Assembly: GCA_047495785.1 (NCBI GenBank)
Contig: JBLDXI010000048.1
Coordinates: 682,001 to 746,000 of the forward strand
Origin: Lepidodermella squamata
Lineage: Eukaryota; Animalia; Gastrotricha
Length of the DNA: 64,000 nucleotides
Direction of reading: 5' to 3'
In this document: piece by piece, positions 31,901 through 44,510 of the stretch
Numbering within the stretch: the first letter of the stretch is position 1
Layout: the number at the start of each line of letters is the position of its first letter
Made by a program: the position numbers and the translations under genes
Notes under the pieces: model-generated
The model's input: the letters and a program-made list of their open reading frames with translations, nothing else
Database searches by the model: none
Told to the model about the DNA's origin: nothing

Positions 31901-34217
31901 TGATTTGGGGAAACTTCTATGATAGAATCAGGCTGAATGCTGTCTATACAGAGCAATTACAATACATCACTTTTATATCCTCCTTTATACTATTACTTAT
32001 ATAAGTTTTATGTTTTATTCATTTGTTTGTTTTGATTAAGGCTATCAATGCTGATGGTAACAACTTACCTGTTCTCGCCTTCTCGGAGCAAGTAATTCGC
32101 ATGGAAAATGTAGCAGACGGGCAATTCTCCCGCCTAATTTTTGCCGCATGGGCCAACACCGGAAACCAGTATCTACTCCGAGAATACAACGGAACTCGAG
32201 ACCATTTGCTCTCTCGATTTTTTTCAACCGCTGAAAAATGGGCGCAATTATCTTATTCTGGTCTAGCTCAAATCGCCGCATTCTCGACTGGAGCTGATTT
32301 TTACCTGCTCGAATTTGCGAGTGGCGGCCCGCTTGACGTTTATCTCAATTCTTGCAATTCAGCAATCTACCCGACTCATTTGCTTCTGACTATGAAGACG
32401 CTGTGCGACAGTCTTGTCTACTTTAAAGAGCGCAATTACACTCATGGCGATATTCGCCTGGCCAATGTTGTTTTGCTGAATCATACCATGGAACCGCCGA
32501 TTTTATTCGAAGTGAAATTACTGCCGCCCGAGATAGATCAACGCGCCTTACCATCCGGCGCGGAACAACCGTTTTTTCTTCGAGATCGCAAAATTTTTTG
32601 GCCGGAAAATGGGCCTATAACCGACGTGTACGCCCTCGGTGTTACTTTCATCCAGCTTTTGAGGCTTGGTAGTGTTCCGACTCAACAAGATGTGGCCGGT
32701 TTTCTCGATTTGGACGAGCCAAATTTAGCGAATTTTCTCGATCGATTCGCCGATTTTCTGCCTGAATTCAAAAAATTATTTCGCCGAATTTTTGGTTTGA
32801 TCAAAACTCTGTTGATCGAAGTTGATGGGGACGTAGAATTTGTGCGCTATATTTCAATGCAGCTTGGTGAAATGGTTAATAATTGCCGAAATCTGCCGCT
32901 AGTCACCCTGAATAGCTTTTCCTCTGAATATTCTTCGATCGAGACTGAAATAAATCGCTACTACCACATTCCGTTTGAAAATATCGAGCCTGGTCCAAAG
33001 CTGAGTCAGGGCAGTTTCGGCGAGGTCATTCGAGCGAGTTGGCGGCAGCGAAATGCGACTGGCCATGTGAATGTTACGGCCGTTGCGTTGAAACGACCGT
33101 TGATAGATCGACCTGATGATTCTCAGCCCGCGTTTAGCCGACTGAATTCCGAGTTTATGATTTGGGTCAATTTGAAACACGAAAACAGTAAGTAAATTAT
33201 TGTCATTTTTCATCTGGCCAAAATTGTTTTTTCTTTAACCATAATTTTGTCCTGGAAATGTACAATTTTGGACATGATATCGGAAATATCTTTGTCCATC
33301 TGACCAGGAATTCGACCCTTTCAATAACCCAGTTTTAATAGTCTTATTACTTTCGGCTTAAAGTTGGAATTATTCCTCCACAATATTGTCCGATTATCCT
33401 TAGGATGCTCCTTGGGGAATACCTCTCTTGATAATATCTTTTTTTTTCAATTGAAGTCATTCAAGTTTACGGCATGACGTATGAAGACGGGCGACCCGGT
33501 ATCGTGATGGAGTATATCGAAAACGCATTAACTCTGGAAACATATTCGAAGAGCAAATCTCATCGTGATTCTGCGTTTTTTCGCGAAATGACCGGTTTAT
33601 TAATTCAGGTTGGCTTCTTCTAAGATTATTGACTCATCATTAAATTCATTTTACTTCAAAAAATTTCGAATTATTGTTTCTGTTTGAATAATTATTTCCC
33701 AATTGTATTTTAAATCTTAATTTAATCGATTTTTAATTTTAAGGTCACGAAAGGAATGCAGCATTTATCGAATCGCAATATGCCTATTGTCCACCGCGAC
33801 TTGGCCGCTAGAAACGTCCTCATCCAACCGTTGCCATTAAACAACGGCTCGCCAAATCTAGTCGCCAAAATCGGCGATTTTGGATTAGCTTGCTTGGTCG
33901 ATACTTCTTCGACCTACCGCCGACTATACGATACGTTTTTTTCGCCGCCACCGTGGTGTGCTCCAGAGGTGGAACGCTCATGCCGCGCGACCCCAGCTTC
34001 TGACGTGTTCAGTTTCGGTACGGTAACTCTGGAGGTCATCTGCCAAGTAACTCCCGAAGAAAGGCCTGTTGTCACTAAACCGCACACGCATTTATTCGAG
34101 AGAGATACCCCGCCTAAATTGCGAGAAATAATGTTGAAATGCTGGCAAAAGCGACCGGAAGATCGGCCAAATTTTCAAATGCTGGAAGTGTTTTTGAACG
34201 TGTTTTATCAGGGCTGA
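28945..34217 (+). CDS. JAK: Janus-kinase-like tyrosine kinase, copy B; canonical HRD
   Basis: Exons 28945-30585, 32041-33187, 33457-33608, 33744-34217; same intron positions and phases as copy A; HRDLAARN, DFG, WCAPE intact. Confidence 0.9.
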
Positions 34218-34567
34218 ATATTTTTTACGTGTCTTTCTATTTATTCTAGTTTTTGCGGTCAATTTTTATGAGCTCTGTCAAGACATAACTGCTCACATTC
34301 CGACGCTCTGTTGAGTTATAAAAGTGTTGTGATGGCTGAGAATATTTGTTACTGCAATTTTATTATTGACGATTAAAACATTTCATTCTCTCTCAAATGA
34401 CTTGAATTTTCACATTTTTCTGTTATTCTTAGGATATGCTTTTAAGATGACCTGATAAAAAATCGTGGCGGCTTTTTTTTCTCTACAAGTGGCGATATTT
34501 TTATAAAACATTATAGCATTCTTTTATTGATAGATTGGTAGATAGTATATTGAGTGAAAGAAGAAGA

Positions 34568-37500
34568 ATGAGTCCGTCGTCGAGTCAAATCATCATTCGC
34601 AACGTCGGGCGTTCGGCCGATGAGAAGGATTTGCACCAGTTGCTGCGCCGTTTCAACCCGCTAGGCATTAGGCTGATGCCGAGTCGCGCGAATGGTCTGA
34701 ACCAAGCGTAAGTTTTCTTCCTTGCGGGGCTTCTATTACGGTCAGAGAAAGAATTTTGTGAATAAATTATAGTTGAAAAAATTAAAAATTAAAAAACTAT
34801 CATACTCAATTTCAATTTTATTTTAAACCGCAAATTCGTTGATGTTGCAATTCGGGACATTTCCCCTTAAAAACTATCAATATCTTTCACTGATTTTCAA
34901 TCAGTTCAAAAATGTCCATCTTCTATGCTTTTATTTCAGAATCGTCGATTTTGACCAGCCGGAATTAGCTCACAAGGCTGTACAGACCCTGAACGGCTTT
35001 GATTGGGTCGACAACGAGTGTCTCTTTGTCGAATTCGTCCCGCCAAGTCAAGACCGCCCCGGCCCCCCAGCCGACCACTCCCGCTACGTTCCGGCCGAAG
35101 ACCCGCGATACGGGGCTCGACCCCCGCAACAGGCCCTGCCACCCCCGGACCACGCCCAGGCCTACTGGAACCGCCAGAACCCTCCGGTCGTGCGCCCGGC
35201 TGGTCACCACGCGGGTGGTCAGTGGGACGACGGTCCTGATGACAGTATGCCGCCAATCCGGGCCAAACCTCGTGGAGTGGTCGATGTCGACGACCTGTTC
35301 GGTTCGTCGGGTCCGAACAAACCAGCTAGGACCCCGTTCTACAGCAGCGAAGTCGACCAGGACATACCGCCTCCCCCGCCTAGGTACGCTGAACGGCCCC
35401 CGCCGACCCGCCCGATGCCACCTGTTGATCGCGACATGTACGACCGCGAAAACCAGCGGCCGCAATACCGCCCGGCCTTCAACGACCAGCCCCCGCCGCC
35501 GCGCCCATCTGTTCAACCCGGCCGTCCTGTCCCGCCTGAGTACATGGGCAAGGAGGAGCTGGTTGACACGTGCTACCGGCAGCGCGATGAAATCGAATCT
35601 CTCCGCGCTGAGGTGGAGCAGTTGATGATTGAAAACGCGAAGCTGAAGCATAGACTGGCGGCTCAACCGGCGTTCCAACCGCCCCCGGTTTCGGCAAACA
35701 ACCCGGCGTCGCAGAACTACGCACCCGGTTCCTACGGGTTCCAGTCACGTGACCCGCAACAATCTCGCCCGGTCGAGCCGGTCAATCGATTCGAATTCGA
35801 TTACCAGCGAAGCGGAGGCGGCGCGCCAGCGCAGAATTCGGCTGGAGGTCAGCGCAGTTTTGACGACGCCCGTGGAGGGGGAGATGCTCCCAGGGGCGGT
35901 GGCGATGGGTTCACGATCGACCGGCAGGGTGATCGTGGCAATTTGAACCGCAGTTATGGCAACGACCGCCCGAGAGCTGGCGGTTTTGATGACGGCGAGG
36001 CTCCCCGCCGATTCGGCGGTAACCGAGGTGAGCAGGGTGATCGGGGTGACCGGGGCCCAATGGGTGATCGGGGTGACCGGGGCCCAATGGGTGATCGGGG
36101 TGACCGGGGCCCAATGGGTGATCGGGGCCCAATGGGTGATCGAGGTGATCGTCCTAGGGACGGCGGGTGTTTCAAATGCGGTGAACAGGGTCACATGTCT
36201 CGTGAATGCCCGAAGGGTGGAAATGACCGGCCCCGTGGTGATGGGTGTTTCAAGTGTGGTGAGCAGGGGCATATGTCTCGGGAGTGTCCGAAGGGGGGTA
36301 ATGATCGGCCGCGTAATGACGGTGCATGCTTCAAGTGCGGCGAACAGGGTCATCAGTCGCGTGATTGCCCCAAGGGAGGCGATCGCAGGGGAGGAGGCGG
36401 TCCTGGTAACTGTTTCAAGTGTGGTGAGTATAATGTTTACGTTCCCTCTGTTTTTGATAATATTAATGAAAAAAATATTACAATTGTGTTTTCTTATTAA
36501 AAATTAAAATATTTTGTACGCAATTGTGGATACATCGGAATTGAGTTATTCGGTACTCTTTGGCTAAAAGGGCTATTTATTATTCATTTTTTAACAATTT
36601 TTCATGATGTGGTAAAAATTGGACGCATCTGTTCTGGGTTGTTCATCCGGTTTGGTTTTGTTTTATTCATTTTTTTTGTTCCGCGTTGGAGTTTCATTGT
36701 GAGTGTAAACATATTTAAATGATGGCCGGAACATTCTTAAAGAAAATAGAAAGATGCATTTGAATTTTTATAATATGACTCCCCTTGGTGTATTTTTCAG
36801 CTTTTTTGGCTTTTTTGAACATGAACAGCTATCTTTTGTAGAATTTGCAATGTTCATAAAAAAAACAGAACAAAATCGGGTTTTCAATATTTCAAAATTG
36901 AGATTTTCTAAAAAAAACTCCGAAAATCGAACATTTCATGTAAAAATCATTGCTAAACTTCGAACAATTCTTGAAAACTTCTGTGTTATCTTGGAGATGA
37001 TCATTGTCAGAAATTAAATTCAAATTTTTAATTTTAATCCTGTGTTATCAGGCCAACCTGGTCATATGTCTCGAGAATGCACTCAGAGTGGCGGTGACGG
37101 TGGTTCTCGCGGCGGCCCTCGCGGCGGTGGCGGAGGCTATGGCGGCGGTTCTCGCGGTGGTTCCAGCTACGGTGGCAACAACTCGAGCGCTCTGAGTGCC
37201 GGCCCCAAGAAGAGCATGGTTGACGATGATTTCGCTGAAGAGGCTGAAGAAACCCCAGCCCCGACCCCTGCTGCCGCTTCAAGCGGTCCGGCTCTAGAAA
37301 GGCCTGGCCAAAGATCGGCTGGATTAGTCGACAGCGAATGGGCCGACAAACCGGAGGAACCGAGCGAAGCCCCGACAACGGCTGAACCTGCCCAACCGGA
37401 AACTCAAACGGTAGAAGAACCAAAGCCTCCAGTAGTCGAGGAGCAAAAACCACCTGTTGAGTCGGCTACCTCTGACAAGCCGAAAGTTCGGATGAACCTG

Positions 37501-40500
37501 CCTTCGGTCCCAATGGCCCTGTTATCGAGAGCTGGAAAACCAGCCCCGGCTCAACCTGCTCCGGCCCCGCCGGCCCCGGTCGAACCCCCAAAACCGGTCG
37601 AGGAGAAACCACCTGTTGAATCGAACGAAAAGGCTTGTTCTTTCTGCTCGAAAGTCCTCGGTAATCTCGTGAAAGACTGCCCAGATTGCCAGGAAGTTCT
37701 TTGCAATAACCTGGACTGCCTAGACGGGCATGTCGGTTCGCAGAAATGCGTTGAAAGGGCCGCGCTTTTAGCTGCTGAAATCCTCTCGCCTGAACATTTG
37801 CGCCGGAAGGAGGCTGAGAAATCAGCCGGAGCCTGGCGCGAGGCGTTGGACCAGATCGAGGCGAAGCGATTCGAGAAACTGACCCGTCACACCCCGGTCC
37901 TGGTTTCAGTCGCAAATTTCAAGAATCCAGACGATTTCTGGGTGTTTGAAGTCTCGCCACTTGACGAAAAGCTGTATCGAGCTGATTTCCCGAGCCTCGC
38001 GATGAAGGCCGCCGTTATCCCGGAATCGAGCCGCGACATTAAGGCGGGTCTTTTCGCGTATTCGACCACAGTTCTGCGACCGCTCGTTCGCGGAACTCCG
38101 GTAGTTGTCGCCCCGCAACAGCGATCGATTGACGCGATGGTTCTGCGAAATGACGACCCGACTGCCGTTATTTTCGAGGATTTCGTCCGGTGTTTGGTGC
38201 TTTCCGTCAATTACGACACGATGATGGCCCAGGTGTTCTGTCTGGATGGCGCGTTCGAGGCTGAAGTTGCAACCAGTGCTCTTCGATATGCCGATGCGGC
38301 TTTCAACGACCTGCCTATCAGGGTAAACAATTACTCTGTTTTTACCTTGAATTATTCAAAAAAATTGGCTGAAGAGAAAAAATTTGAAAATTGGGAGTAG
38401 TCCCAAATAATGGCGATTTTATAATTTATTTTCTAATAATTAACAGAAATTTCCCGAAAAATAAGTGGGTTTTCTTATTTTTCGTCTCTATTTTCAGAAT
38501 TTCAGTAATATTTGTTAATTAAATTGAATATTCTCTGAATATTGAAAAAATTCGAAAATTAGTTTTTTGATATTTTAATTGAAACCCAATAATAATTTTT
38601 TTACGAATTTTCTCGTCTTTTTCAGGCTATTCATTGCACGATGGCTCCATTTTTGCAACCTCCAGCTGGCGGCTCGTGGCCCAGCTCGCAAGATTTCGCG
38701 AATCTGTCCGGCAAGCAGTACTACGCCCTGTTCTCTGAGTCGAAAAACGGCCGTGTCGAAACGCAACTCGCTGAAACTAATGGCGAGTTCAATTTCGTAG
38801 CCGACAAACTGCTGCGGACCAAGCACGCATCGTCGACCAGTGTCACCAGCGCTGCGACCACCCAGTGCCCGGCTGATTCGAGCCATTCGTTTAACAGCCC
38901 ACTGCAATGGTTGACTCCGAACTCGCAGTTCGAGGCGAATTTTGTGAAGATCGAAAATCTCGAGAATTTCTCGCTGATGCTGCAATCGAAATTCGACGTC
39001 GCCCAATTCACGCAGTTGATGTGCCGTTTCTACGACAATTTCTCCTCGGATCAGTCGTTGCGAGAGCCGAAACCCGGACAGCTAGTGGTTGTCGGCCAGC
39101 GCGGCAATTGGGATCGAGGGGTCTGGCGGGGTGCAAACGAGGTTGGTTTTAAATTTTAAATTTTTAAATTTGCTCGCAAAATTTTGAATATTTTTTGTTT
39201 GTTTGAATATTTGCTAAATATTGGAGAATTTTAAAAAATTCAGAAGTTGCAACACAGAATTTTCTTCTTCTTTGAGTCGGGAAAATGAACGTTTTTTATA
39301 TTTCAGGTTGAGCTTGTCGATTCGGGTCACGTGTTGACTGACACGAAAAATCTCCTCGTCTACCCGCTGCACTACCAATTTTTGGTCGCTCCGGCTATCG
39401 GCGCCGCGAAATGCCGTCTCGCCGAAGGATTCATCAACTCAATTGACTATTTCGACAAAGACGCAATTGCCGCTTTCGGCTCGATCGTCGCTGGGCAGTC
39501 GATCAAACTACGGCTTGTTTCGATTGAAGGCAACGCCACTCTGGTCGTCGCTTTCTGCGACGATAAATACCAGAAGCTGGTTGTTGAGAAGATCAAACGG
39601 CCGCTGGTTACAATCGAGAGCTTCGAGAAGTACATCGCCACCGGCCAGGTGTACACGGCCACCATTCTCGAGACCGGCGAGCGGAAAGGCCAATTCATTG
39701 AGGCCAAGATCATGGTTCACGGTCCCGAGTTTGATAAAGCTCGGGATTCGCTCTCGCAAATCTCGATCGATGAGTCGAAGCGGAAAGCGGTGCCGAGGCC
39801 GGTCGCAAACCAAGTCTGTCTGCGGGTATCGCGCGATGACGAGGGCGAAATGCTGTCGCGAGTCAAAATTCTGGGCAAGAGCGAAAAATCGCCACTGGAA
39901 AAGGTTCGCGTTGAGTCGATGGACACGGCTGAAATCGAGGAGATTCCGATTTCCGAGCTCATTGAAGCGAACCGGGAAATCGCCGAATTGCGCCGTCTAG
40001 CCCTGCGTTGCCGCATCGAGCTGTCGAAATTGTACGACGAGTCAACGGCCGTTTGCCAGTATCACACGCTGGAAATGAAGGCTGACCTGCACGATGGCTG
40101 GGTTTTCACGGTGCAGCGGTTTTTGATGGATCGTAACGTGATTCCGATGCAGCAGCTGCAGGGGGATACGGCGGATGGCGTTGTGTATTGGGAGAAGGAT
40201 CCAAGTTCGTTCTACGTGTTGGTCGAGGCGCACGCTGATATGGAGGATGAGTTGCAAGATTTCGCGGGCAACCAGCCGCCGCGTTACGTTGACGGGTCTT
40301 CTCTCATCAAAAATGAGCTGTGCGTCGCCAAGTTTGGTAAGATTTTTTTACGGATTTTTCTTCGCTTTTTTGTATCAACTATTAACATTTATTCACCGAA
40401 GATAAACAAGGAAAAATTGGCTTATACCAAGGCTAACTTTGCTACCTCCCTGAGTTCCTCCCTAAATTATTTTAGACACTATCCCTGATATTTTTGTTTA

Positions 40501-42874
40501 TAACAAACTCAACTTGCATTGATTGCTGCCATTGCGTGATTTTTTCATCGTTCTTTTATTCTGAAGTTTGAATTATATTCTGAAACGCTAACAATTGCAT
40601 CATGGGTGGCTGTAAGGCCATCTCAATTTTTTTCGAAAATTTGCAAAAATGGTATTTAACCCGTTACCACCCAGACCTACGGTTTCCTGAGGCCTACGGT
40701 CAAGAAACGGTCTTATAGATAAAGTTTAGGCGCTAATTAGAATTTAAAAAAACTCAAAAATTGTGTTGCACCGCGTTGCACCATGGCGACACGAGCCGGC
40801 TGTGGAATCGTGGCCATACGAGACAAAGACGAGGACCAACGCTTCGCACTTTCCGTCGTCTCGGCAGTTTCGAAGTTCGTAGCCATAGTGACGCAGTTGT
40901 TGTCCTTCCATCGAACCAGCAAAACTTCTCCGTCGCTCATGAACTCGAAATGCCCACGAAGCTTCTTTTTCATTTGCTTCTCATCAGATCACCACCGGCC
41001 ATATCAGCATCGGAGTAACCACAAAGAGAGCGGTCGTCGCGGCGGTACAAAATACCGTAATCCTTAGTGCCCTTGAGGTAGCGCAAGACCCGCCTAGTTG
41101 CGGTCAGGTGCACTTCGGTCGCCGCGGTTAGATGGCGGGATAAGAGCGATACGGCGCACGAGATGTCCGGCCGCGTGCCAATAGTGGCGTAATTTAGGCT
41201 GCCGACGACGCTTTGGTAGAGCAGCGGGTCGACTGGTCGGCTAGGACCGACATCGGTAAAGCGCGGACATTCGGGTCTGTCTAAACTTCATCCAGAGATG
41301 CGGTGGGGTTCTTCGTACGTAACTTTAGCCTCCTGGAGGTTGCGGACGATGGTGGAACCGCGAGATATATGAGTCGATGGTCTCGCTTTCACACTTGAGT
41401 GGAGCTGATCTCGCCACATGGAGTTGCCCGCTTGACATGTTGTTCGAGGCGCGAATAGATGATGTGTTGGTCGTCGTCGGAGCCACTCATCATGTGGGTC
41501 AGGGACCTGTCGATATGGTCGGACAAGATGATGCAGGCCTTCCGTTGGCGGGCTTCAAACTCCGTCTCTTATCGTCGATGGTAGCAGCCGGTGCTAGGAC
41601 TTCGGTGCCATCGACTAGTTCATCGGGGGGCGGGCGTGTATTTTTTTCATTTACCGAATATGTTCAGCTCTAATCAAAGATTATGGCCTGGAGAGTTTAT
41701 CTGTGTTTTAAAAAGACCATGTCATTGTTTTCGGGAAAACATCTTTTGGGCGCGCATTCGCAAAGACCAGTGTCTCAGTCGGCGGCCGTACGCAGTATCA
41801 ATGGTTCAGAACTGGAACCCATAACCTGTAAATATTAAGTGCTTCTAGGAAATCGCTGTTTAGCATACTACGAAAGAAATAGCTCAAAACAACGATACAT
41901 ACAATAAATACACCATAGTACCTTAGTGTAGTAACTTAATTGTCGGTAATTCCGGTACTTCTCTCCGGCTGCATCCTGTCAGCGATGGATGTACAATTGA
42001 AGTTATTGCTCTTGACTTCGGCCTCGATTATGCTGAACGCTGCGAGAGACAAACCGCGCTTCGGCTCTTCGACTTGGGGATGACATTCGTGTCGCGCCCC
42101 AGAAACTTCGACAACTGCAGACAGACATGCGCAGGGTACGAGATCCGCATCAGCATCGGACACTTCCCCGCCTCGTTGCCATTGCGACAACCGTTTTTTC
42201 AGTAGTATTCTGATCGCCTACCATACTTCCCGTGGTTGAAGCGGTTTTTTTCCGATATTTTTTTCCGACATTCTCTTTTGAAATCCTGATTTCGAAGGAT
42301 TTAAAACTTGCTAAATAATATGAAATCTTGTTAATTACATTTAGAAATATTCTAAATGAAATCTAAGAGACTCTTGCCAATGGTTGCTTTTTGGATGGTC
42401 AGGGTGATGTCCAAATAACTGAGCTCACCTAATTCACCTAATATCAGAACAATTGAGAGTTTTTATTTGAAATTTGAATTTTTTGTTATTTTAGAGGACG
42501 TCTGGTACCGCGCTGCGATCACCACGCCTGGTGCCAAGCCGAAAGTCCTCTTTGTGGACTACGGAAATGAGTGCGAGATCGACAACCCGACCGACGATCT
42601 GCGCCAATTCGACCCTCGATTCGCAAAATGGGCCCTCCAGGGTGTCTTCTGCCAACTGGCTGGCGTCGCCCCGAAAGGCGGTCAGCTAGGCGCTGAATGG
42701 CCGCAAGAAGCTGCCGAGGCGTTCCGCGAGGCTGTTCACGAACGGGATGTGACCCTCAGTTTGGTGCCGCAGCGGGATGAGAACAACGAAGTCGCGGTAA
42801 AATTGATCCGCAAAGATGACAATGTCGATGTTGCGGACGAACTAGTCTCGCAGGGCCACGCTGTTCGAGTTTGA
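34568..42874 (+). CDS. Multi-Tudor protein (TDRD1-like) with RRM, four CCHC zinc knuckles, RG-rich regions and MYND-like finger
   Basis: Exons 34568-34707, 34940-36423, 37052-38322, 38626-39141, 39307-40336, 42495-42874, phase-consistent. RRM (IIIRNV...AIVDF...AVQTLNG); 4 x CFKCGxxGHxSRxC; CSFC..CPDC..C..C..H..C finger; about four extended Tudor units, the last canonical (FEDVWYRA...VLFVDYGNE). Confidence 0.85.
36018..36152 (+). repeat. Coding minisatellite: 15 consecutive Gly-X-Y triplets (GDR/GPM)
   Basis: 27-bp unit ggtgatcggggtgaccggggcccaatg repeated in tandem within a run of 9-bp sub-units. Confidence 0.9.
40660..40985 (-). mobile_element. piggyBac transposon fragment
   Basis: MKKKLRGHFEFMSDGEVLLVRWKDNNCVTMATN...RWS...IPQP matches the PGBD transposase core; ttaa|cccgtt terminus at 40656-40665. 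Confidence 0.8.
40992..41610 (-). mobile_element. Ty1/copia LTR-retrotransposon fragment (gag remnant joined to RT/RNase H)
   Basis: Minus strand reads YQSVVGSLNYATIGTRPDISCAVSLLSR...RRVLRYLKGTKDYGILY...GYSDADMAG; upstream ETIDSYISRF..IVRNLQEA is gag-like. No start codon, so missing from the ORF track. Confidence 0.85.
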
Positions 42875-43778
42875 TGAGCGAGGGAGAGAACTTTTTTGTA
42901 AACCTATATCTCTTTTGTGAAAAAATCTGAGCGTAGAAATCTAGTTTGAAATGTAGTTCTGAATTTACACCGAAAATATTTGCTCAAAACATAGCTGAAA
43001 CTTTCAAAATAAGGAATCTGAAATTACTTGCCACTATTCTTACACAAGCTGGTGAAACTGTTATCGGTGATTTGTTATTGTTTTTTCGTATCATGTTGTG
43101 TTTTTCTAGCCAAGCGATTGGAAATTACAGGGTAACAATCGGCTCAGTCTTACGCGAGGTTTCTTTGAAATCTAGGGGTAGTTGAGCTGATTTCTCGGAA
43201 AATCGCTTGTAAAATATATTGTCAAAATGATATTCCACTTTTGCTCAAATAAAATGAACAAAACTTGTCTTATTATATTTGTTAGTCCTATTGCGGCCAT
43301 AACACAATCACGAGAGAATTCAAAAAAATCAGTCGAAAATAGCGAAAAGTAATTTCTTCAGATTGGATTAAATAATGTTCAAGTTTGTAATGAGTCAATC
43401 AGAATTTTTTTTCGAATTCACAGCATTTCCGTTTCATTATATCTCAAAGCTCCTCAAACACGATTGAAAAGATGAATTGGGCAGGTTTTTTTGAAATTAC
43501 ATGAAAAAGAGCCTTCACTCGCTTATTACCTTCAAGTAGTACCTTCAAGTTTGGTAAGGGAAAATTTGAAAGTTTCGAGAGGAAATGAATTTTTCTGAAT
43601 TTTCTTCAATTTTTCTAATTTTTTTCAATTTTCTTCACGATAAAATCGAATATTCTCAGATGGTTCAATAATTTAGCAAAGACATTTAGATTTTTGAAAT
43701 TTTGCATAATTTGCTGTATATTTCATTTTACAAAATTTAATGTTTTTAGGTGTTAATTTTAATTATTTGAGGCGGAAA

Positions 43779-44510
43779 ATGCCTTTCCCGATGTTAAAAC
43801 TCGGCTACCTGGCCTTCAGGCAGCTATCGAAGCCCATCAACCGCTGGATCCAGCAAAAAGCGAAAGCCAGCCCTTTCGTCCGAAACTACTTCTGCATCCC
43901 ACCCGCTCAACTGTACCACTGGTACGACACTCGCTTCACAAAAAACAGCCTCAACCTGCAAGTCGGAACAATCAAACCTATGAAACCAGAAGAAGCCGTG
44001 CAACTAGGCGCCGAAATTCTCGGCGAAATGTTCATTTTCGCGATTTGCGTGATAGTCGTGAGCTACGAGTACTACCGGTCCTACGCGAAAGAAACAGCCA
44101 GGGAAAAGGCGCTGCAGGACCGGTTCACCCGGCTTGAAATAAAAAATCGAGAACTCGACATTGAAGTCGATCAAATGGACGCGAGACTGCGCCATGTCGA
44201 GCGGCTAGGCCTCGGATCTGAGGGCGGCACGCTGATATCGCAAATCGCGACTAAATTGAATTCGATTGTCCCAATCGGCGGCAAGGACTCGCAGCAGGCG
44301 AAGGAGGGCGAACGGGGCCCGAGGAGTACGGAAGAACGGCTCGGGCACGTTGAAACCCGCCAAATCGAACTGCTGATCAGTTTGAATGGTCTCGATAAAC
44401 GGCTGTTGGATCTTCAAACTTTGGTCGATGAGCTAACGAAACCGGCGCCGATTTTGAACCCTCTTGGTATCGGAACTGGAAATTCGAATTCGAATAAGGA
44501 AAAGAAATGA
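43779..44510 (+). CDS. OPA3: OPA3-like mitochondrial protein
   Basis: MPFPMLKLGYLAFRQLSKPI...PPAQLYHW...IKPMKPEEAVQLGAEILGEMFIF is the OPA3 signature; single coding exon with a long coiled-coil tail. Confidence 0.92.
   Translation: MPFPMLKLGYLAFRQLSKPINRWIQQKAKASPFVRNYFCIPPAQLYHWYDTRFTKNSLNLQVGTIKPMKPEEAVQLGAEILGEMFIFAICVIVVSYEYYRSYAKETAREKALQDRFTRLEIKNRELDIEVDQMDARLRHVERLGLGSEGGTLISQIATKLNSIVPIGGKDSQQAKEGERGPRSTEERLGHVETRQIELLISLNGLDKRLLDLQTLVDELTKPAPILNPLGIGTGNSNSNKEKK

What the first reader, a model, noticed from the sequence alone, without database searches (positions are those of the whole stretch)
34568..42874. Unusual germ-granule scaffold: RRM, Vasa-like knuckles and RG repeats fused to MYND-like plus multi-Tudor
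Seen: one gene carrying RRM, Pro-rich region, short coiled coil, RG-rich tracts, four CFKCGxxGHxSRxC knuckles, a MYND-like finger and about four Tudor units. Established: TDRD1 is MYND plus four Tudors; such knuckles and RG repeats typify invertebrate Vasa/GLH N-termini; Tudors read methyl-arginine in RG motifs. Inference: a protein holding both the mark and its reader plus RNA-binding modules, able to self-assemble nuage in the piRNA pathway.
Basis: partly seen in the sequence, partly recalled or inferred. Interest (0 to 1): 0.75.

Follow-up and report, generated by a model that had tools for sequence, protein, structure and literature searches.

The report
Multi-Tudor scaffold carrying Vasa-type zinc knuckles
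This is one real six-exon animal gene for a TDRD1/Vreteno-type multi-Tudor scaffold (the kind that organises transposon-silencing granules), with four Vasa-like RNA-binding zinc knuckles added; I found that combination only here and in one related species.

Summary
Window 34568-42874 (+) is one six-exon gene of 1606 codons. All introns are GT..AG and the phases fit. It encodes:
- an RRM split by intron 1
- a Pro-rich disordered region and a short coiled coil
- G/R/D-rich repeats
- four CCHC knuckles, the fourth split by intron 2
- an eight-ligand Cys/His finger
- four extended Tudor domains

A whole-library HMMER search found one true relative, P0001 (37% identity). It lies between the same neighbours, a Tyr kinase and OPA3. 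There the stretch from the Pro-rich region to Tudor 4 carries no introns, with one 100-N assembly gap. That confirms four of the five splice junctions and rules out two genes.

- RRM + MYND + Tudor is already the known Vreteno/Veneno design, and MYND + 4 Tudor is TDRD1. Only the knuckle/repeat insertion is new.
- The "mark plus reader" idea is weak. Only Tudor 4 keeps the aromatic cage, the RG sites are mostly DRG, and RG richness is not conserved in the relative.
- Pfam does not recognise the finger as MYND. Its spacing looks more HIT-like.
- The relative lacks the RRM.
- Expression and germline function were not testable.

Verdict: a new variant of a known kind, of moderate interest.

The parts
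34568..34707 (+). Exon 1: start codon and the N-terminal half of the RRM (RNP2 reads IIIRNV)
   Evidence: ATG at 34568, donor GTAAGT. Pfam RRM_1 profile positions 1-34, 16.7 bits.
34940..35039 (+). Start of exon 2: the C-terminal half of the RRM (RNP1-like NQAIVDF, alpha2, beta4)
   Evidence: Pfam RRM_1 profile positions 44-66, 16.6 bits. 56% identity over 18 aa to the RRM of an SRSF7-like gene of the same genome. Phase 2 fits exon 1.
35040..35552 (+). Pro-rich disordered region with short motifs shared with the relative (PPPDH..AYW, GQW[DE]D, LF.SS, R.PF.S.E)
   Evidence: BLASTP E 4e-9 against the upstream ORF of the relative; alignment A4.
35553..35675 (+). Short coiled coil of about 40 aa
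   Evidence: Weak Pfam coiled-coil matches here (SlyX, DUF7653) and at the same position in the relative (KASH_CCD, Spc24). Sequences shown.
35838..36155 (+). G/R/D-rich low-complexity tract with RG and RGG sites, including perfect GDRGDRGPM repeats at 36035-36142
   Evidence: Tandem Repeats Finder: period 27, 3.4 copies, 100% matches. RG counts.
36168..36368 (+). CCHC zinc knuckles 1-3 (CFKCGEQGH[MQ]SR[ED]C), a 78-nt tandem repeat
   Evidence: Pfam zf-CCHC 71 bits. TRF period 78, 2.7 copies. Regex listing.
36411..37080 (+). Knuckle 4, split by intron 2 (36424-37051): CFKC G | QPGHMSREC
   Evidence: Donor GTGAGT and acceptor TATCAG, phase 1. The ortholog has this knuckle unbroken.
37087..37173 (+). 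RGG/GGY box after knuckle 4
   Evidence: Translation; three RGG.
37636..37749 (+). Eight-ligand Cys/His finger (C4-C2HC, MYND/HIT-like) at the position of the TDRD1 MYND
   Evidence: All eight ligands are invariant in the ortholog. No Pfam MYND or HIT match. hhalign gives 26% to MYND and 29% to HIT.
37837..38322 (+). Extended Tudor 1 (degenerate, no aromatic cage), end of exon 3
   Evidence: Colinear with Tudor 1 of TDRD1 in A3. Structured block at residues 340-560 of the ortholog model.
38626..39141 (+). Exon 4: end of the Tudor 1 unit and N-terminal part of Tudor 2
   Evidence: Pfam TUDOR profile positions 3-72. The junction R|AIHC is contiguous in the ortholog.
39307..40336 (+). Exon 5: rest of Tudor 2, Tudor 3 (degenerate cage), N-terminal part of Tudor 4
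   Evidence: Pfam TUDOR E 2.5e-9. 37% identity over the full length to P0001.
40337..42494 (.). Intron 5 (2158 nt), carrying fragments of dispersed repeats
   Evidence: A piece of about 105 nt has at least 11 copies elsewhere in the genome at 75-94% identity. Donor GTAAGA and acceptor TTTTAG, phase 1.
42495..42874 (+). Exon 6: Tudor 4 core with an intact aromatic cage (F of AKF in exon 5; Y of WYRA; F-V-D-Y-G-N), SN-like C-terminus, stop codon
   Evidence: Pfam TUDOR E 3.3e-8. Best PDB sequence hits are TDRD1 eTudors 5m9n and 4b9w. Cage columns in A3.

Best explanation
The locus is a single gene for a TDRD1/Vreteno-class scaffold built on extended Tudor domains. The lineage is probably a rotifer, an attribution taken from earlier agents and not checked here.

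Shown:
- The layout is a zinc finger followed by four extended Tudor domains, colinear with TDRD1.
- In front of it lie a disordered, Pro-rich N-terminus with a coiled coil, G/R/D repeats and four Vasa-type CCHC knuckles. In this species an RRM precedes those.

Inferred:
- The last Tudor, the only one with an intact aromatic cage, docks symmetrically dimethylated arginines of PIWI proteins.
- The three cage-less but conserved Tudors and the finger bind partners without methylation and help place the protein in granules.
- The knuckles, plus the RRM where present, hold single-stranded RNA on the scaffold.
- The coiled coil and low-complexity repeats favour multimerisation or condensation.

The net effect would be a scaffold that brings RNA and PIWI together in one polypeptide.
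For: One gene:
- Canonical splice sites with matching phases.
- Knuckle 4, Tudor 2 and Tudor 4 are each completed across an intron.
- The only true relative among 1.84 billion representatives, P0001, carries knuckles, finger and four Tudors in one ORF. Its neighbours are the same kinase and OPA3.
- In that relative the Pro-rich, coiled-coil and repeat part continues upstream in open frame, apart from a 100-N gap.

Family:
- Named hits of the Tudor region are mostly TDRD1.
- The nearest ESM Atlas clusters are TUDOR+zf-MYND and TUDOR+RRM+zf-MYND. Their scores are below 0.9, so this is a lead only.
- Foldseek top hits are Drosophila Tudor eTud10-11 and TDRD1 eTD3, the latter with TM-score 0.71-0.74.
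- PDB sequence hits of exon 6 are TDRD1 eTudors.
- By position of hits, no other finger-plus-Tudor gene turned up in the genome.

Cage: intact only in Tudor 4, in both species.

Knuckles: zf-CCHC at 71 bits, 52-55% identical to Vasa arrays.

Context: PRMT5 and many Piwi-domain loci exist in the genome.

Published analogues: the Vreteno RRM binds RNA, the Veneno MYND is needed for granule localisation, and cage-less eTudors bind partners (PMC10711660, PMC6411831).
Against: - There are no expression, localisation or binding data. No transcript could be retrieved because the joined protein was not searched.
- The finger is not recognised as MYND or HIT by Pfam.
- Orthology to TDRD1 rests on architecture and hit ranking, not on a tree. 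The Tudor-gene survey notes that multi-Tudor proteins cluster noisily (PMC12147562).
- The RRM has degenerate RNP motifs and is missing in the relative, so it is dispensable for the conserved core.
- The structure model is of low overall confidence (pLDDT 52.7).
Confidence: 0.7

Rival explanations
1. One reading: the protein's own RG repeats are dimethylated and read by its own Tudor domains, so it polymerises into nuage by itself.
For: The window protein has 19 RG dipeptides, 6 of them RGG. It has one cage-competent Tudor. PRMT5 genes are present in the genome.
Against: Most RG sites are in a D-R-G-D/P context, with no GRG and only one [GA]R[GA]. The repeats are very young, with 100%-identical 27-nt units. 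The ortholog has only about 7 RG and a different repeat unit, GGNDRFGGDSRS, so RG richness is not a conserved feature. Three of the four Tudors lack the cage.
Confidence: 0.12
2. There are two adjacent genes, an RRM/knuckle RNA-binding protein and a finger/Tudor protein, wrongly read as one.
For: Intron 2 is 628 nt and AT-rich. No transcript evidence was obtained here.
Against: Knuckle 4 is completed only by splicing exon 2 to exon 3, in matching phase. The ortholog encodes knuckles and Tudors in a single uninterrupted ORF. There is no + strand AATAAA between exon 2 and exon 3.
Confidence: 0.03
3. It is a general RNP-granule or RNA-processing scaffold that works in the soma (stress-granule or P-body type) and is unrelated to PIWI.
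For: The knuckles and RRM resemble those of an SRSF7-like splicing factor of the same genome, with 56% knuckle identity. No germline data exist. Veneno itself acts in somatic cells (PMC6411831).
Against: The Tudors are of the extended (SN-flanked) type. Their solved matches are almost all piRNA-pathway proteins: Tudor, TDRD1, TDRD2/Papi, Krimper and Qin. The named sequence hits are TDRD1, TDRD6 and TDRD15.
Confidence: 0.15

Closest known systems
TDRD1 (vertebrates): MYND finger plus four extended Tudor domains
   Same: A zinc finger directly N-terminal to four colinear extended Tudors (A3). TDRD1 gives most of the named sequence hits, the best PDB sequence hits for exon 6 and Foldseek matches to eTD3 with TM-score 0.71-0.74. 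The last Tudor has a full aromatic cage.
   Different: The finger does not match Pfam zf-MYND. Its spacing is C-x4-C-x4-C-x3-H where MYND has C-x5-C-x3-C-x7-H. Three Tudors lack the cage. About 700 extra N-terminal residues carry the RRM, Pro-rich region, coiled coil, G/R/D repeats and four CCHC knuckles.
Vreteno / Veneno (CG9684) of insects: RRM + MYND + 2-3 extended Tudors
   Same: An N-terminal RRM, a disordered linker, a zinc finger and then Tudors of which only some keep the cage (PMC6411831, PMC10711660). The ESM Atlas lists arthropod TUDOR+RRM_1+zf-MYND clusters among the nearest, as a lead only. Presence or absence of the RRM also varies here: the relative lacks it, much as Bombyx Vreteno has long and short isoforms.
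   Different: There are four Tudors rather than two or three. CCHC knuckles and G/R/D repeats sit between the RRM and the finger. The RRM has degenerate RNP motifs. No sequence-level orthology was shown.
Vasa/DDX4 N-terminus of many invertebrates: CCHC knuckles with G/RGG spacers
   Same: The knuckle array is 52-55% identical to the Hydra CnVAS1 and sea-urchin Vasa arrays and shares the GHMSR[DE]C signature. The genome's own Vasa-like gene has the same type of knuckles.
   Different: There is no DEAD-box helicase core. The genome keeps a separate knuckled Vasa-like gene, so this is an addition and not a replacement. Ser codons differ (TCT/TCG against AGC), so there was no recent gene conversion.

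Membership tests
TDRD1 | N-terminal MYND-type zinc finger (Pfam PF01753) | tested here: inconclusive
   An eight-ligand finger sits at the right position and is conserved in the ortholog. There is no PF01753 match in hmmscan runs set to E <= 10, whose speed filters drop most matches above about 0.1, and none in the whole-genome scan. hhalign gives 26% to a MYND set and 29% to a HIT set. The spacing is HIT-like.
TDRD1 | Four tandem extended Tudor domains | tested here: met
   Four Pfam TUDOR stretches in the ortholog. Colinear with the four Tudors of TDRD1. Four structured blocks match solved eTudors.
TDRD1 | Aromatic cage that reads sDMA on PIWI | tested here: inconclusive
   The cage residues are complete only in Tudor 4, in both species. 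Binding itself cannot be tested here.
TDRD1 | Orthology by phylogeny, germline expression, PIWI binding | not testable with these tools
   No tree was built because multi-Tudor proteins cluster noisily (PMC12147562). No expression or interaction data were reachable.
Vreteno/Veneno | N-terminal RRM | tested here: inconclusive
   The two halves match complementary parts of RRM_1 at 16.7 and 16.6 bits, each below the 20.7-bit cut-off. The joined domain was not scored. The RRM is absent from the ortholog's locus.
Vreteno/Veneno | MYND finger followed by 2-3 eTudors | tested here: inconclusive
   A finger is present but is not recognised as MYND. There are four Tudors rather than two or three.
Vasa/DDX4 | DEAD-box helicase core (PF00270/PF00271) | tested here: not met
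   No helicase domain in any exon or in P0001. Only the knuckle array resembles Vasa.
zf-CCHC (PF00098) zinc knuckle | C-x2-C-x4-H-x4-C units above the Pfam cut-off | tested here: met
   71.1 bits against a cut-off of 20.8, with three units plus one split unit.

The most novel reading that the evidence does not exclude
In this lineage a TDRD1-type scaffold has taken on the RNA-tethering N-terminus that otherwise typifies Vasa. One polypeptide would then hold the RNA substrate (knuckles, with or without the RRM) and the PIWI docking site (Tudor 4). That would give a natural answer to the open question of how target RNA is delivered to TDRD1-type complexes that lack an RRM. The near-coincident intron inside a knuckle in this gene and in the genome's own Vasa-like gene would then hint that the knuckles were copied from Vasa.
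Probability: 0.25. Interest if true: 0.6.

Novelty: new variant of a known kind. Interest (0 to 1): 0.45.

Why it matters
Tudor scaffolds organise the piRNA machinery, but how RNA is brought into TDRD1-type complexes is unresolved (discussed in PMC10711660). A TDRD1-like protein that carries its own Vasa-type knuckles would be a natural experiment on that question. The design is kept in two species only 37% identical. It also shows how modular germ-granule proteins are rebuilt in a poorly sampled animal lineage. Without expression or binding data it remains an annotation-level result.

Tried and rejected
- Word search with exon 5 found nothing.
- Two JGI metagenome scans and one GTDB genome scan found no further relatives.
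- Single-sequence AlphaFold of finger plus Tudor 1 was unusable (pLDDT 45).
- The ESM Atlas search with the finger alone gave no usable hit.
- The RRM halves found no counterpart anywhere in the 23-kb locus of the relative.
- P0002 (LRR) and P0003 (Ig) from the big search are spurious repeat matches.
- An origin of RRM plus knuckles from the SRSF7-like gene L004 was considered. Knuckle identity is 56% and the RRM similarity is generic, so nothing can be inferred.
- A retroelement Gag origin of the knuckles was considered. Gag hits reach only 38-42% identity.
- As a result, the combined RRM score, a full-length architecture search and an exact-sequence look-up of transcripts were not run.
- My reading of the ORF fragments in intron 5 as copia-like and piggyBac-like got no Pfam support. 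Only their repetitiveness is shown.
Full report
**Observation**

The region 34568-42874 on the + strand holds six open stretches that join into one reading frame of 4821 nt (1606 codons plus stop). The five introns all have GT..AG ends, and their phases fit. I examined the exons one by one, by reference. So three things were not run: a combined score for the split RRM, a full-length architecture search, and an exact-sequence look-up of transcripts.

The exons carry these features:
- **Exon 1 and the start of exon 2** give the two halves of an RRM. The Pfam RRM_1 matches cover profile positions 1-34 (16.7 bits) and 44-66 (16.6 bits). They are complementary, in order and in phase, but each is below the cut-off alone. 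The RNP motifs lack the usual aromatic residues.
- **The rest of exon 2** encodes a Pro-rich disordered region, a coiled coil of about 40 residues, a G/R/D-rich tract and three CCHC knuckles (zf-CCHC 71 bits). The tract includes GDRGDRGPM units from 100%-identical 27-nt repeats. The knuckles themselves form a 78-nt tandem repeat.
- **The fourth knuckle** is split by intron 2 and is complete only after splicing.
- **Exon 3** adds an RGG box, an acidic and Pro-rich linker, an eight-ligand Cys/His finger and the first Tudor.
- **Exons 4-6** complete four Tudor units. Tudor 2 and Tudor 4 are each split by an intron.

**One gene**

A HMMER search of exon 5 against 1.84 billion representative proteins gave a single true relative, P0001. 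It is 1131 aa long, 37% identical, with E 2e-50. The other two hits are repeat artefacts.

P0001 has four CCHC knuckles, the same linker and finger, and four Pfam TUDOR stretches. It is one uninterrupted ORF on a metagenome scaffold, flanked upstream by a Tyr kinase and downstream by OPA3. The window gene has the same neighbours.

Upstream of P0001, and open apart from a 100-N assembly gap inside the repeat array, lie a homologous Pro-rich region (E 4e-9), a coiled coil and G/D/R/S/F repeats. Alignments A1 and A2 run straight across the window's exon 2/3, 3/4, 4/5 and 5/6 junctions. The two-gene reading is therefore excluded for everything from the Pro-rich region onward. The gene is single-copy in the 121-Mb genome.

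**What it is**
- The Tudor region of P0001 finds multi-Tudor proteins, and the named ones are mostly vertebrate TDRD1.
- In a joint alignment the finger and the four Tudors are colinear with the MYND and four Tudors of TDRD1.
- Exon 6 finds TDRD1 eTudor structures first by sequence.
- An AlphaFold model of P0001 has low overall confidence (pLDDT 52.7), but its four Tudor blocks reach 70-90. It matches Drosophila Tudor eTud10-11, TDRD1 eTD3 (TM-score 0.71-0.74), TDRD2/Papi, Krimper and Qin.
- The ESM Atlas places P0001 nearest to TUDOR+zf-MYND clusters and lists arthropod TUDOR+RRM_1+zf-MYND clusters. The scores are below 0.9, so this is a lead only.
- By position of hits, I saw no other gene in this genome that combines a MYND hit with Tudor hits.

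The literature shows that RRM + MYND + Tudors is the Vreteno/Veneno design, and that TDRD1 is the RRM-less, four-Tudor form (PMC6411831; PMC10711660).

**What is different**

*The knuckles.* Among all hits of both word searches, only P0001 combines zf-CCHC with TUDOR. A full-text search returned no paper combining Tudor domains, zinc knuckles and germ granules. The array is 52-55% identical to the Vasa knuckle arrays of Hydra and sea urchins. The genome also keeps its own knuckled Vasa-like gene, so the knuckles here are an addition.

*The finger.* All eight ligands are conserved. Neither zf-MYND nor zf-HIT matches it. Profile comparison is undecided, at 26% for MYND and 29% for HIT. The spacing resembles HIT more than MYND.

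*The aromatic cage.* Only Tudor 4 keeps F..Y..F-x-D-Y-G-N, in both species. Tudors 1-3 are degenerate yet conserved.

*The RRM.* The relative has only about 90 nt between the kinase stop and its first ATG, and no RRM-like sequence anywhere in 23 kb. The RRM is therefore either a gain here or a loss there.

**The mark-plus-reader idea**

The window protein has 19 RG dipeptides. Most are in a D-R-G context, with no GRG and one [GA]R[GA]. The perfect DNA repeats are very young. The relative has about seven RG sites and a different repeat unit. RG richness is therefore not a conserved property of the family, and only one Tudor could read sDMA. Self-recognition is possible but has little support. 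PRMT5 and many Piwi-domain loci do exist in the genome.

**Mechanism (inferred)**

I read this as a TDRD1/Vreteno-class scaffold.
- Tudor 4 docks methylated PIWI.
- The cage-less Tudors and the finger bind partners and help localise the protein. The published parallels are Vreteno eTD0 and eTD2 and the Veneno MYND.
- The knuckles, and the RRM where present, hold RNA.
- The coiled coil and repeats favour multimerisation.

None of this was tested. Earlier agents of this scan take the genome for a probable rotifer, and I did not check that.

**Verdict**

This is a new variant of a known kind, seen in two species, and of moderate interest.

Noticed in passing
L025 (G000:C33:2706300-2709400), 1-800 and onward: The genome's Vasa-like gene builds its N-terminus from mini-exons. 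Four GHMSRDC-type knuckles are each split by a phase-0 intron directly after CxxC. Two unsplit GHFAREC-type knuckles and the DEAD-box core follow in one 686-aa exon. Knuckle 4 of the Tudor gene is split one nucleotide further 3' (phase 1).
   Followed up: partly
window 40337-42494 (intron 5): The only long intron (2158 nt) holds dispersed-repeat debris. A piece of about 105 nt (about 41640-41745) has at least 11 copies elsewhere at 75-94% identity. Minus-strand ORF fragments look transposon-derived from memory but got no Pfam hit.
   Followed up: partly
window 36035-36142: The GDRGDRGPM array is encoded by 27-nt and 18-nt tandem units at 96-100% identity. This is a very recent expansion and likely varies in length between individuals.
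   Followed up: no
L002 8691-8811 against window 34217-34940: The relative has only about 90 nt between the kinase stop and the first ATG of the Tudor gene, and it has no RRM. The window has 351 nt of spacer, an RRM exon and intron 1. The relative's coding region also has no introns where the window has four.
   Followed up: partly
L004 (G000:C3:4460865-4464038), minus strand: This is an SRSF7/9G8-like gene, with an RRM (69 bits) followed by an exon with two CCHC knuckles. It holds the closest knuckle paralogue of the Tudor gene within the genome (56% identity).
   Followed up: partly
window 32023-34217 and 43740-44510: The neighbours are the 3' end of a JAK-like Tyr kinase gene (upstream) and an OPA3 gene (downstream). 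Both are syntenic with the relative's scaffold.
   Followed up: partly
G000:C9:1456478-1456606 (-) and C9:1460937-1461083 (+): A MYND hit and a weak Tudor hit lie 4.3 kb apart on opposite strands. I took them for separate genes but did not inspect them.
   Followed up: no
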